Source: Octopus sinensis (Eukaryota). From it: a stretch of 22,639 nt of DNA. Shown here piece by piece: positions 4,477-4,558 of the stretch (positions are counted from its first letter, which is position 1; each line of letters starts with the position of its first letter). A program made the position numbers and the translations under genes. The stretch spans positions 1-22,639 of the forward strand of contig NW_021836949.1 of the NCBI RefSeq assembly GCF_006345805.1, written 5' to 3'. The notes under the pieces were generated by a model, which saw only the letters and a program-made list of their open reading frames with translations, was not told where the DNA came from and searched no databases.

Positions 4477-4558
4477 CTCATATTGCATGTTTGGAATAAA
4501 GCGGGAAAATGCGTCCGAATGTACTTACCTAAAAAAGAAAAAGAAAAAACATGATATT
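4477..4558 (-). other. Candidate recursive splice site (branch point, polypyrimidine tract, TAG|GTAAGT) with a 52-nt RS-exon-like segment
   Basis: The minus strand reads TGCTAATATCATGTTTTTTCTTTTTCTTTTTTAG|GTAAGTACATTC, with the junction at 4529/4528. A second donor GAG|GTATGG ends the segment at 4477. Motif evidence only. Confidence 0.4.

What the first reader, a model, noticed from the sequence alone, without database searches (positions are those of the whole stretch)
4477..4558. Recursive-splice-site (ratchet point) architecture on the minus strand, with an RS-exon
Seen: the minus strand has a branch-point match (TGCTAAT), an uninterrupted pyrimidine tract (TTTTTTCTTTTTCTTTTTT), then TAG immediately followed by a perfect donor GTAAGT (junction 4529|4528). 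A second donor, GAG|GTATGG, lies 52 nt on (segment 4528-4477). That segment has stops in two of three frames and is not a multiple of three. Established: recursive splice sites in long Drosophila and vertebrate introns have this AG|GT overlap, and a short downstream RS-exon helps define them. Inference: this window may lie in a very long intron of a minus-strand gene removed stepwise. I am not aware of recursive splicing being characterised in cephalopods, but cannot check. Caveat: A-rich tracts are common here and no host gene is visible.
Basis: partly seen in the sequence, partly recalled or inferred. Interest (0 to 1): 0.72.

Follow-up and report, generated by a model that had tools for sequence, protein, structure and literature searches.

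The report
Candidate recursive splice site, unverified
The minus strand really does carry a textbook "ratchet point" (branch point, 19-base pyrimidine tract, AG|GTAAGT, and a weaker donor 52 bases on). No host gene, related sequence or RNA evidence could be reached, so it remains a good candidate for stepwise intron removal in an octopus-like genome and not a demonstrated one.

Summary
Observation confirmed. On the minus strand the elements are:
- TGCTAAT at 4562-4556, with the branch A at 4557, 28 nt from the acceptor and no AG in between.
- T6CT5CT6 at 4549-4531.
- AG|GTAAGT, with the junction at 4529|4528.
- GAG|GTATGG, giving a 52-nt out-of-frame segment (4528-4477).

It is the best of the 87 AGGT sites in the window by a wide margin: 14.6 bits against 3.2 for the runner-up. 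The core motif is expected about 4e-5 to 7e-4 times per window. In a 2.3-2.8 Gb octopus genome that still gives roughly 5-85 chance copies. Requiring the branch motif and downstream donor as well cuts this to about 0.02-7.

Every sequence-level feature of fly-type ratchet points is met. These are TT at -5/-6, an RS-exon of about 50 nt that is out of frame, and a ratchet donor stronger than the RS-exon donor.

The context features could not be tested. No exon or host gene was detected in 22.6 kb, and no cephalopod DNA or RNA is reachable with these tools.

A rival reading exists on the plus strand. The tract is A6GA5GA6 lying 30 nt after an AATAAA, which looks like a decayed retroposon tail, but there is no target-site duplication.

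My estimates: used recursive site about 0.4, unused fortuitous motif about 0.35, ordinary or cryptic exon about 0.15.

The parts
4556..4562 (-). Branch-point-like heptamer TGCTAAT; presumptive branch A at 4557
   Evidence: It lies 28 nt upstream of the acceptor G with no AG in between. A CTRAY motif in the 18-45 nt zone occurs at 7% of mock junctions in this window.
4531..4549 (-). Uninterrupted 19-nt polypyrimidine tract T6CT5CT6, with T at -3 to -6
   Evidence: It is the only AG in the window (both strands) with 19/19 upstream pyrimidines. TT at -5/-6 matches 196/197 Drosophila ratchet points.
4523..4530 (-). Composite AG|GTAAGT (junction 4529|4528): acceptor abutting a consensus donor, the putative ratchet point
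   Evidence: It ranks 1 of 87 AGGT sites, at 14.6 bits against 3.2 for the runner-up. The 8-mer alone occurs twice in the window against about 0.2-0.7 expected.
4477..4528 (-). 52-nt RS-exon-like segment, not a multiple of 3, with stops in two frames
   Evidence: [quoted passage not shown] The open frame has no protein homologue.
4471..4479 (-). Second donor GAG|GTATGG (8.8 bits), weaker than the ratchet donor TAG|GTAAGT (10.3 bits)
   Evidence: A donor at least this good lies 20-100 nt downstream of only 3.3% of mock junctions. Its lower strength fits the donor-competition model.
4495..4500 (+). AATAAA on the opposite strand, 30 nt upstream of the A-rich tract (rival reading: polyadenylation signal of a retroposed sequence)
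   Evidence: AATAAA density on the plus strand is 24 per 22.6 kb, so one in a 25-nt window has p of about 0.03.
4531..4549 (+). The same bases read on the plus strand: A6GA5GA6, a decayed poly(A)-like tail
   Evidence: It is one of only two tracts in the window with at least 17 of 19 A. No target-site duplication was found.

Best explanation
The element is a splice-competent composite acceptor/donor on the minus strand, most likely a recursive splice site (ratchet point) of the kind known from Drosophila and vertebrates.

Proposed mechanism (all steps inferred, none shown):
1. A long minus-strand pre-mRNA is transcribed through the window.
2. U2AF and U2 recognise the TGCTAAT branch point (A at 4557) and the 19-nt pyrimidine tract. 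U1 at the downstream donor GAG|GTATGG (4477|4476) defines a 52-nt RS-exon.
3. The upstream exon is ligated to 4528. This removes the first part of the intron as its own lariat and recreates a strong donor, xxG|GTAAGT.
4. That donor is stronger than the RS-exon donor. It out-competes it and is spliced to the next acceptor, so the 52-nt out-of-frame segment never reaches the mRNA.

What is shown here is only the anatomy and its statistical rarity. Transcription, strand, host intron, use and conservation are all unverified.
For: - All motif elements are present at the stated coordinates.
- The site is the extreme outlier among 87 AGGT sites: 14.6 against 3.2 bits. It is the only AG with 19/19 upstream pyrimidines.
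- The core motif is expected 4e-5 to 7e-4 times per window.
- Both a branch motif in the right zone and a good donor 20-100 nt downstream occur at 0.33% of mock junctions (7.8% under lenient definitions). With the core motif's 5-85 chance copies, the complete architecture is therefore expected only about 0.02-7 times by chance in a 2.3-2.8 Gb genome (sizes).
- Published sequence features are all met. TT at -5/-6 is present, as in 196/197 fly ratchet points, and the pyrimidine tract is prominent. The RS-exon is about 50 nt, out of frame and flanked by a donor, and the ratchet donor is the stronger of the two. AGGTAAGT and pyrimidine enrichment also mark mouse RS sites.
- 22.6 kb without any detectable coding exon is compatible with a very long intron.
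Against: - No host gene, exon or transcription evidence exists for either strand.
- AATAAA is not depleted on the minus strand (38 against 24), and base skews are contradictory.
- The median octopus intron is only about 2.5 kb and gene density about 8 per Mb. An exon-free 22.6 kb window is therefore more often intergenic than intronic.
- Recursive sites are rare in a genome of comparable size: 19 in mouse brain, and 46 of 84 junction-supported candidates there were simply unannotated exons.
- Exon-like acceptor/donor pairs arise on both strands of this window at lenient thresholds: 7 on plus and 3 on minus.
- The same bases read on the plus strand look like AATAAA plus a poly(A) tail.
- Whether the 400-bp unique block is part of a multi-copy repeat could not be tested genome-wide.
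- Splice-site scores use position weight matrices recalled from memory, not MaxEntScan and not a cephalopod training set.
Confidence: 0.4

Rival explanations
1. Fortuitous, unused motif in non-coding (intergenic or antisense-intronic) repeat-rich DNA. In the more specific version, the pyrimidine tract is the antisense of the decayed poly(A) tail of an old plus-strand retroposed sequence. That sequence's last bases, ACTTACCT, happen to be the complement of AGGTAAGT. This is the same way antisense Alu tails supply pyrimidine tracts in primates.
For: - The plus strand reads AATAAA (4495-4500), then 30 nt, then A6GA5GA6 (4531-4549). This spacing has p of about 0.03 by chance, the same order as the downstream-donor coincidence cited for the recursive reading.
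- Tracts this A-rich are rare in the window (2, both on the plus strand), so this one needs an origin.
- The core motif alone is expected about 5-85 times by chance in a genome of this size.
- There is no host gene.
- Most of an octopus genome at 8 genes per Mb is not sense-intronic.
- Pseudo-exon-like pairs occur on both strands.
Against: - No target-site duplication was found, exact or with mismatches.
- The presumed element body (about 4260-4530) has no paralogue in the window, no protein homologue, and no tRNA/7SL/5S-like head.
- The full architecture (core, branch motif and donor) is expected at most a handful of times per genome by chance.
- Every element is near-consensus, not mediocre, which is unusual for a chance site.
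- A retroposon origin would not exclude later use as a splice site.
Confidence: 0.35
2. Ordinary or cryptic exon. In this reading 4528-4477 is a real 52-nt exon of an unannotated minus-strand transcript. It could be a UTR, lncRNA, poison or cassette exon. It merely happens to begin with GTAAGT, and it may be included and not always skipped (an 'expressed RS-exon').
For: - It has a strong acceptor and a good donor 52 nt apart.
- In mouse, 46 of 84 AGGT candidates with junction reads turned out to be unannotated exons.
- Hundreds of annotated human exons start with a donor-like sequence and are protected from recursive splicing by the exon junction complex (abstract of PMC6224609, seen).
Against: - It has no coding potential: stops in two frames, a length that is not a multiple of 3, and no homologue for the open frame.
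- No other exon-like partner with homology exists anywhere in the window.
- A start matching all six bases of GTAAGT is expected in only about 3e-4 of exons by composition.
- The ratchet donor being stronger than the exon's own donor predicts skipping under the competition model.
Confidence: 0.15

Closest known systems
Drosophila intronic ratchet points with cryptic RS-exons (Ubx, kuz, Bx; Hatton 1998, Burnette 2005, Duff 2015, Joseph 2018/2021)
   Same: - Juxtaposed acceptor and donor around AG|GT, with a donor matching GTAAGT.
- An unusually prominent T-rich tract with TT at -5/-6.
- A short cryptic exon of about 50 nt that is out of frame.
- A downstream donor weaker than the ratchet donor.
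   Different: - The fly sites are defined by location in introns of tens of kb, by ultraconservation of the motif, and by junction, lariat and saw-tooth RNA evidence. None of these could be examined here.
- The -3 base here is T (TAG), not the commoner C.
- The organism appears to be an octopod, where the process has not been described.
Vertebrate recursive splice sites in long neuronal genes (Sibley 2015; mouse brain set, PMC8797253)
   Same: - AGGTAAGT complementary to the U1 5' end.
- A pyrimidine-rich 20 nt upstream.
- RS-exon definition by a downstream 5' splice site.
- A large, repeat-rich genome of similar size.
   Different: - Vertebrate sites sit in introns longer than 51 kb within genes longer than 294 kb, mostly in first introns, and are conserved. 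Host intron and gene are unknown here.
- In mouse they are very rare (19 sites), so the predictive value of the motif alone is low.
Exonisation of antisense retroposon tails (for example antisense Alu poly-T acting as a pyrimidine tract) and intronic pseudo-exons (my own knowledge, not tested here)
   Same: - The pyrimidine tract is the complement of an A-rich tail that follows an AATAAA at 30 nt on the other strand.
- Exon-like acceptor/donor pairs occur by chance on both strands.
   Different: - There is no recognisable element body, no repeat-family match and no target-site duplication.
- The acceptor is immediately followed by a donor matching the GTAAGT consensus in all six bases, which is not a feature of Alu-type exonisation.

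Membership tests
Recursive splice site / ratchet point | Juxtaposed strong 3' splice site and 5' splice site around AG|GT, with a donor close to GTAAGT | tested here: met
   T6CT5CT6-AG|GTAAGT at 4549-4523 on the minus strand. It ranks 1 of 87 AGGT sites, 14.6 against 3.2 bits. The weight matrices were recalled from memory, not MaxEntScan.
Recursive splice site / ratchet point | Prominent pyrimidine tract with TT at -5/-6 (196/197 fly ratchet points) | tested here: met
   Positions -3 to -6 are all T, and 19/19 upstream bases are pyrimidines.
Recursive splice site / ratchet point | Usable branch point upstream with an AG-free zone down to the acceptor | tested here: met
   TGCTAAT, branch A at 4557, 28 nt from the acceptor, with no AG in between. 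This is sequence evidence only; no lariat data.
Recursive splice site / ratchet point | Short cryptic RS-exon (about 50 nt, usually out of frame) closed by a downstream donor weaker than the ratchet donor | tested here: met
   The segment is 52 nt with stops in two frames. The donor GAG|GTATGG scores 8.8 bits against 10.3 bits for TAG|GTAAGT. The background frequency of such a donor is 3.3%.
Recursive splice site / ratchet point | Lies in the sense orientation inside a very long intron of an expressed gene | tested here: inconclusive
   - There is no clean long ORF.
- 165 stop-free segments of at least 38 aa from all six frames gave zero homologues among 5.8 billion proteins.
- The window is therefore exon-free as far as homology can tell, which fits either a long intron or intergenic DNA.
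- Strand proxies are ambiguous.
Recursive splice site / ratchet point | Motif conserved well above the flanks in related species | not testable with these tools
   No cephalopod DNA is held in the searchable collections. Local ORFs are absent from the protein collection, there are no homologues, and a 31-mer scan of the metagenome contigs found nothing.
Recursive splice site / ratchet point | RNA evidence: exon-to-ratchet junction reads, saw-tooth nascent-RNA profile, lariats to and from the site | not testable with these tools
   No RNA-seq access.
Retroposed sequence 3' end (plus strand) | A-rich tail preceded by AATAAA at 10-35 nt | tested here: met
   AATAAA at 4495-4500, a 30-nt gap, then A6GA5GA6 at 4531-4549.
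Retroposed sequence 3' end (plus strand) | Flanking target-site duplication | tested here: not met
   There is no exact repeat of 10 nt or more. The only mismatch-tolerant match is a 16-mer with 3 mismatches 1.4 kb away. An old insertion could have lost it.
Retroposed sequence 3' end (plus strand) | Body recognisable as a repeat family or a parent gene | tested here: not met
   There is no paralogue in the window, no protein homologue, no tRNA, and no Rfam match better than E = 0.2. The source genome itself could not be searched.
Ordinary protein-coding cassette exon | Frame-preserving length and coding conservation | tested here: not met
   The length is 52 nt (not a multiple of 3), two frames have stops, and the open frame has no homologue.

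The most novel reading that the evidence does not exclude
This is a working ratchet point. If so, recursive splicing with a fly-type motif and a cryptic RS-exon operates in cephalopods, a lophotrochozoan lineage with vertebrate-sized genomes and very long neural genes. That would argue that the mechanism is ancestral to bilaterians and recruited wherever introns become huge.
Probability: 0.35. Interest if true: 0.6.

Novelty: new member of a known kind. Interest (0 to 1): 0.42.

Why it matters
Recursive splicing has been characterised only in flies and vertebrates. The held literature contains no relevant paper on it in cephalopods or octopus.

Octopus genomes are 2.3-2.8 Gb and have large brains, so they are a natural third test case. 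The questions are whether stepwise intron removal is a general bilaterian answer to long introns, and whether its motif grammar is shared. That grammar is TT at -5/-6, GTAAGT, and a cryptic exon of about 50 nt.

One motif-only candidate proves nothing. It does define a cheap, decisive test on public data: junction reads at one coordinate, plus a genome-wide sense-versus-antisense count of the motif in long introns.

If the site is unused, it is a useful reminder that in gigabase genomes even a flawless composite splice motif can arise by chance or from a retroposon tail.

Tried and rejected
1. **Structured RNA or a known RNA family at the site.** Rfam at gathering threshold over the whole window gave nothing. 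The permissive scan of 4090-4700 gave only microsatellite-driven miRNA noise with E of 0.2 or more. There are no tRNAs. The fold of 4440-4600 is no better than shuffles, z = +0.9.

2. **Site inside a repeat present elsewhere in the window.** Self-BLAST found no paralogue of 4380-4660. The repeat finder was swamped by microsatellites.

3. **Route to orthologous DNA through ORFs.** Ten local ORFs are absent from the 15-billion-protein collection. Two searches with concatenated six-frame segments (4,912 and 3,975 aa) found nothing. One scan of the metagenome contigs with a 31-mer across the site found nothing. This negative is uncalibrated, because I did not check whether any octopus DNA is in that collection.

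4. **Host-gene detection by homology.** Same searches, negative. Segments under 38 aa, low-complexity segments and the SINE copies were not queried, so short exons could be missed.

5. **Strand of transcription from composition.** The plus strand has T>A but C>G. AATAAA counts are 24 on plus and 38 on minus, about what the A/T skew predicts. Uninformative.

6. **Target-site duplication for the retroposon reading.** None found.

7. **A TE-like ORF I thought I recognised at about 11.3-11.9 kb.** It has no homologue, so the recollection was dropped.

8. **A Markov simulation.** It timed out and was replaced by an exact calculation.

9. **Calls that failed on argument format.**

Full report
**What is there**

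Reading the minus strand of 4440-4600 gives:

...TTATGCTAATATCATG TTTTTTCTTTTTCTTTTTT AG|GTAAGTACATTCGGACGCATTTTCCCGCTTTATTCCAAACATGCAATATGAG|GTATGGATG...

- TGCTAAT occupies 4562-4556. The presumptive branch adenosine is at 4557, 28 nt from the acceptor G at 4529, and there is no AG in between.
- The 19-nt tract (4549-4531) is pure pyrimidine.
- AG (4530-4529) abuts GTAAGT (4528-4523).
- A second donor, GAG|GTATGG, closes a 52-nt segment (4528-4477) with stops in two of three frames.

There are two small corrections. The AG follows the tract directly, so there is no extra T. Tracts this A-rich are not common here: only two exist in the window, both on the plus strand.

**Is it more than chance?**

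Within this window, clearly yes.
- It is the only AG on either strand with 19/19 upstream pyrimidines.
- I scored all 87 AGGT sites with approximate 3'ss and 5'ss weight matrices. These were recalled from memory and are not MaxEntScan. This site scores 14.6 bits and the runner-up 3.2.
- An exact Markov calculation gives 4e-5 (order 1), 1.2e-4 (order 3) and 7e-4 (order 5, overfitted because it was trained on the site itself) expected occurrences of Y12+AGGTAAGT per window, both strands.

Genome-wide the picture changes. Octopus assemblies are 2.3-2.8 Gb, about 1.2e5 such windows. The core motif alone should therefore arise about 5-85 times by chance.

The accessory features help. I treated 6,292 positions of this same window as mock junctions.
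- A CTRAY branch motif 18-45 nt upstream occurs at 7% of them.
- A donor of at least 8.8 bits lying 20-100 nt downstream occurs at 3.3%.
- Both occur at 0.33%. With lenient definitions (YTNAY; donor of at least 8 bits within 300 nt) the figure is 7.8%.

The whole architecture is thus expected roughly 0.02-7 times per genome by chance. These figures assume the block is single-copy, which I could not check.

**Surroundings**

The window is AT-rich (about 33% G+C) and dense with TA/TG microsatellites. It has no tRNA and no Rfam family, and no long clean ORF.

A SINE consensus that I recalled from octopus genomic sequence matches three places: 7887-8338 (+), 13310-13466 (-, 95% over 158 nt) and 16738-17264 (-). 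It rests on a remembered sequence, so it is a lead and not a test.

I concatenated all 165 non-low-complexity stop-free segments of at least 38 aa from six frames, leaving out the SINE copies. I searched them against 5.8 billion proteins in two queries, and neither gave a single hit. The window therefore contains no detectable coding exon on either strand.

That fits a very long intron. It fits intergenic DNA equally well, and intergenic DNA is the larger part of a genome with about 8 genes per Mb and a median intron of 2.5 kb. Composition gives no usable strand signal.

**Comparison with what defines recursive sites**

[quoted passage not shown] They carry TT at -5/-6 in 196 of 197 cases and are far better conserved than other AG|GT sites in the same introns.
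- Joseph et al. describe the obligatory cryptic RS-exon as short (about 50 nt), poorly conserved, generally out of frame, and closed by a donor that loses the competition to the stronger ratchet donor.
- Mouse sites are enriched for AGGTAAGT and upstream pyrimidines. They lie in introns longer than 51 kb, and only 19 were found in mouse brain. Forty-six of 84 junction-supported candidates there were unannotated exons.

The present site meets every sequence-level criterion. It has TTTT at -3 to -6, a GTAAGT donor, and a 52-nt out-of-frame segment, and its ratchet donor scores 10.3 bits against 8.8 for the second donor. The context criteria (long host intron in sense orientation, conservation, junction/lariat/saw-tooth RNA evidence) could not be tested with the collections on hand.

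**A rival reading on the other strand**

On the plus strand the tract is A6GA5GA6. It lies exactly 30 nt after an AATAAA at 4495-4500. That is the layout of a polyadenylated, retroposed 3' end whose tail has decayed.

The chance of an AATAAA in that position is about 0.03. This is the same order as the downstream-donor coincidence used in favour of the recursive reading. The AATAAA lies inside the putative RS-exon, so the two readings compete for the same bases.

Against this rival:
- No target-site duplication was found.
- No recognisable element body, paralogue or RNA-gene-like head was found.

The two readings are not exclusive, because tails of old retroposons are a known source of pyrimidine tracts for new splice sites.

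**Weighing**

The posterior depends mainly on how many true recursive sites an octopus genome holds, which nobody knows.
- If the number is fly-like (hundreds to thousands), a site with this complete architecture is almost certainly real.
- If it is mouse-like (tens), real and chance sites are of similar number.
- If cephalopods do not use the mechanism, it is chance.

I allowed for the post-hoc choice of features, the untested possibility of a multi-copy block, and my approximate scoring. On that basis I put a used recursive site at about 0.4, an unused fortuitous or retroposon-derived motif at about 0.35, an ordinary or cryptic exon that merely starts with GTAAGT at about 0.15, and anything else at 0.1.

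**Verdict**

This is a well-formed candidate that was correctly described, and it would be a new member of a known kind in an unstudied clade. It has no evidence of use. It is worth one look in public stranded total RNA-seq and a whole-genome alignment.

Noticed in passing
window 7887-8338 (+), 13310-13466 (-), 16738-17264 (-): Three copies or fragments of an abundant octopus-type SINE-like repeat, each adjoining TA/TG microsatellite.
   Followed up: partly
window 17210-17217 (+): The only other AGGTAAGT in the window sits inside the antisense SINE copy and has no pyrimidine tract. High-copy repeats can therefore seed consensus donor 8-mers.
   Followed up: partly
window 10770-10970, 14289-14491, 2614-2677: A second interspersed repeat family (77-83% identity between copies). 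It is unclassified, and the ORFs across it were not searched.
   Followed up: no
window 5257-5369 and 5532-5642: An inverted duplication with arms of about 111 nt that are 91% complementary and a 162-nt spacer. It could be a foldback or MITE-like structure, or a local inversion-duplication.
   Followed up: no
window 19287-19466 and 19422-19600: A tandem duplication of a microsatellite-containing unit of about 135-180 nt, at 95% identity.
   Followed up: no
window 3548-4091: A 544-bp (TA)n array (about 283 units, 85% matches). On the minus strand it begins about 390 nt downstream of the second donor at 4476. If the region is transcribed, this long self-complementary tract would sit just after the putative RS-exon.
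   Followed up: no
window 11141-11230 (+): A plus-strand exon-like pair: acceptor cttcctctgtcctcatttcAG (9.1 bits) and donor GAG|GTAGGT (10.4 bits) 61 nt apart. It has no protein homologue. It illustrates that pseudo-exons occur on both strands here.
   Followed up: partly
window 2460-2478 (+): The only other strongly A-rich tract (A12TAATAAA). It lies about 140 nt upstream of a fragment of the second repeat family and may be another retroposon tail.
   Followed up: no
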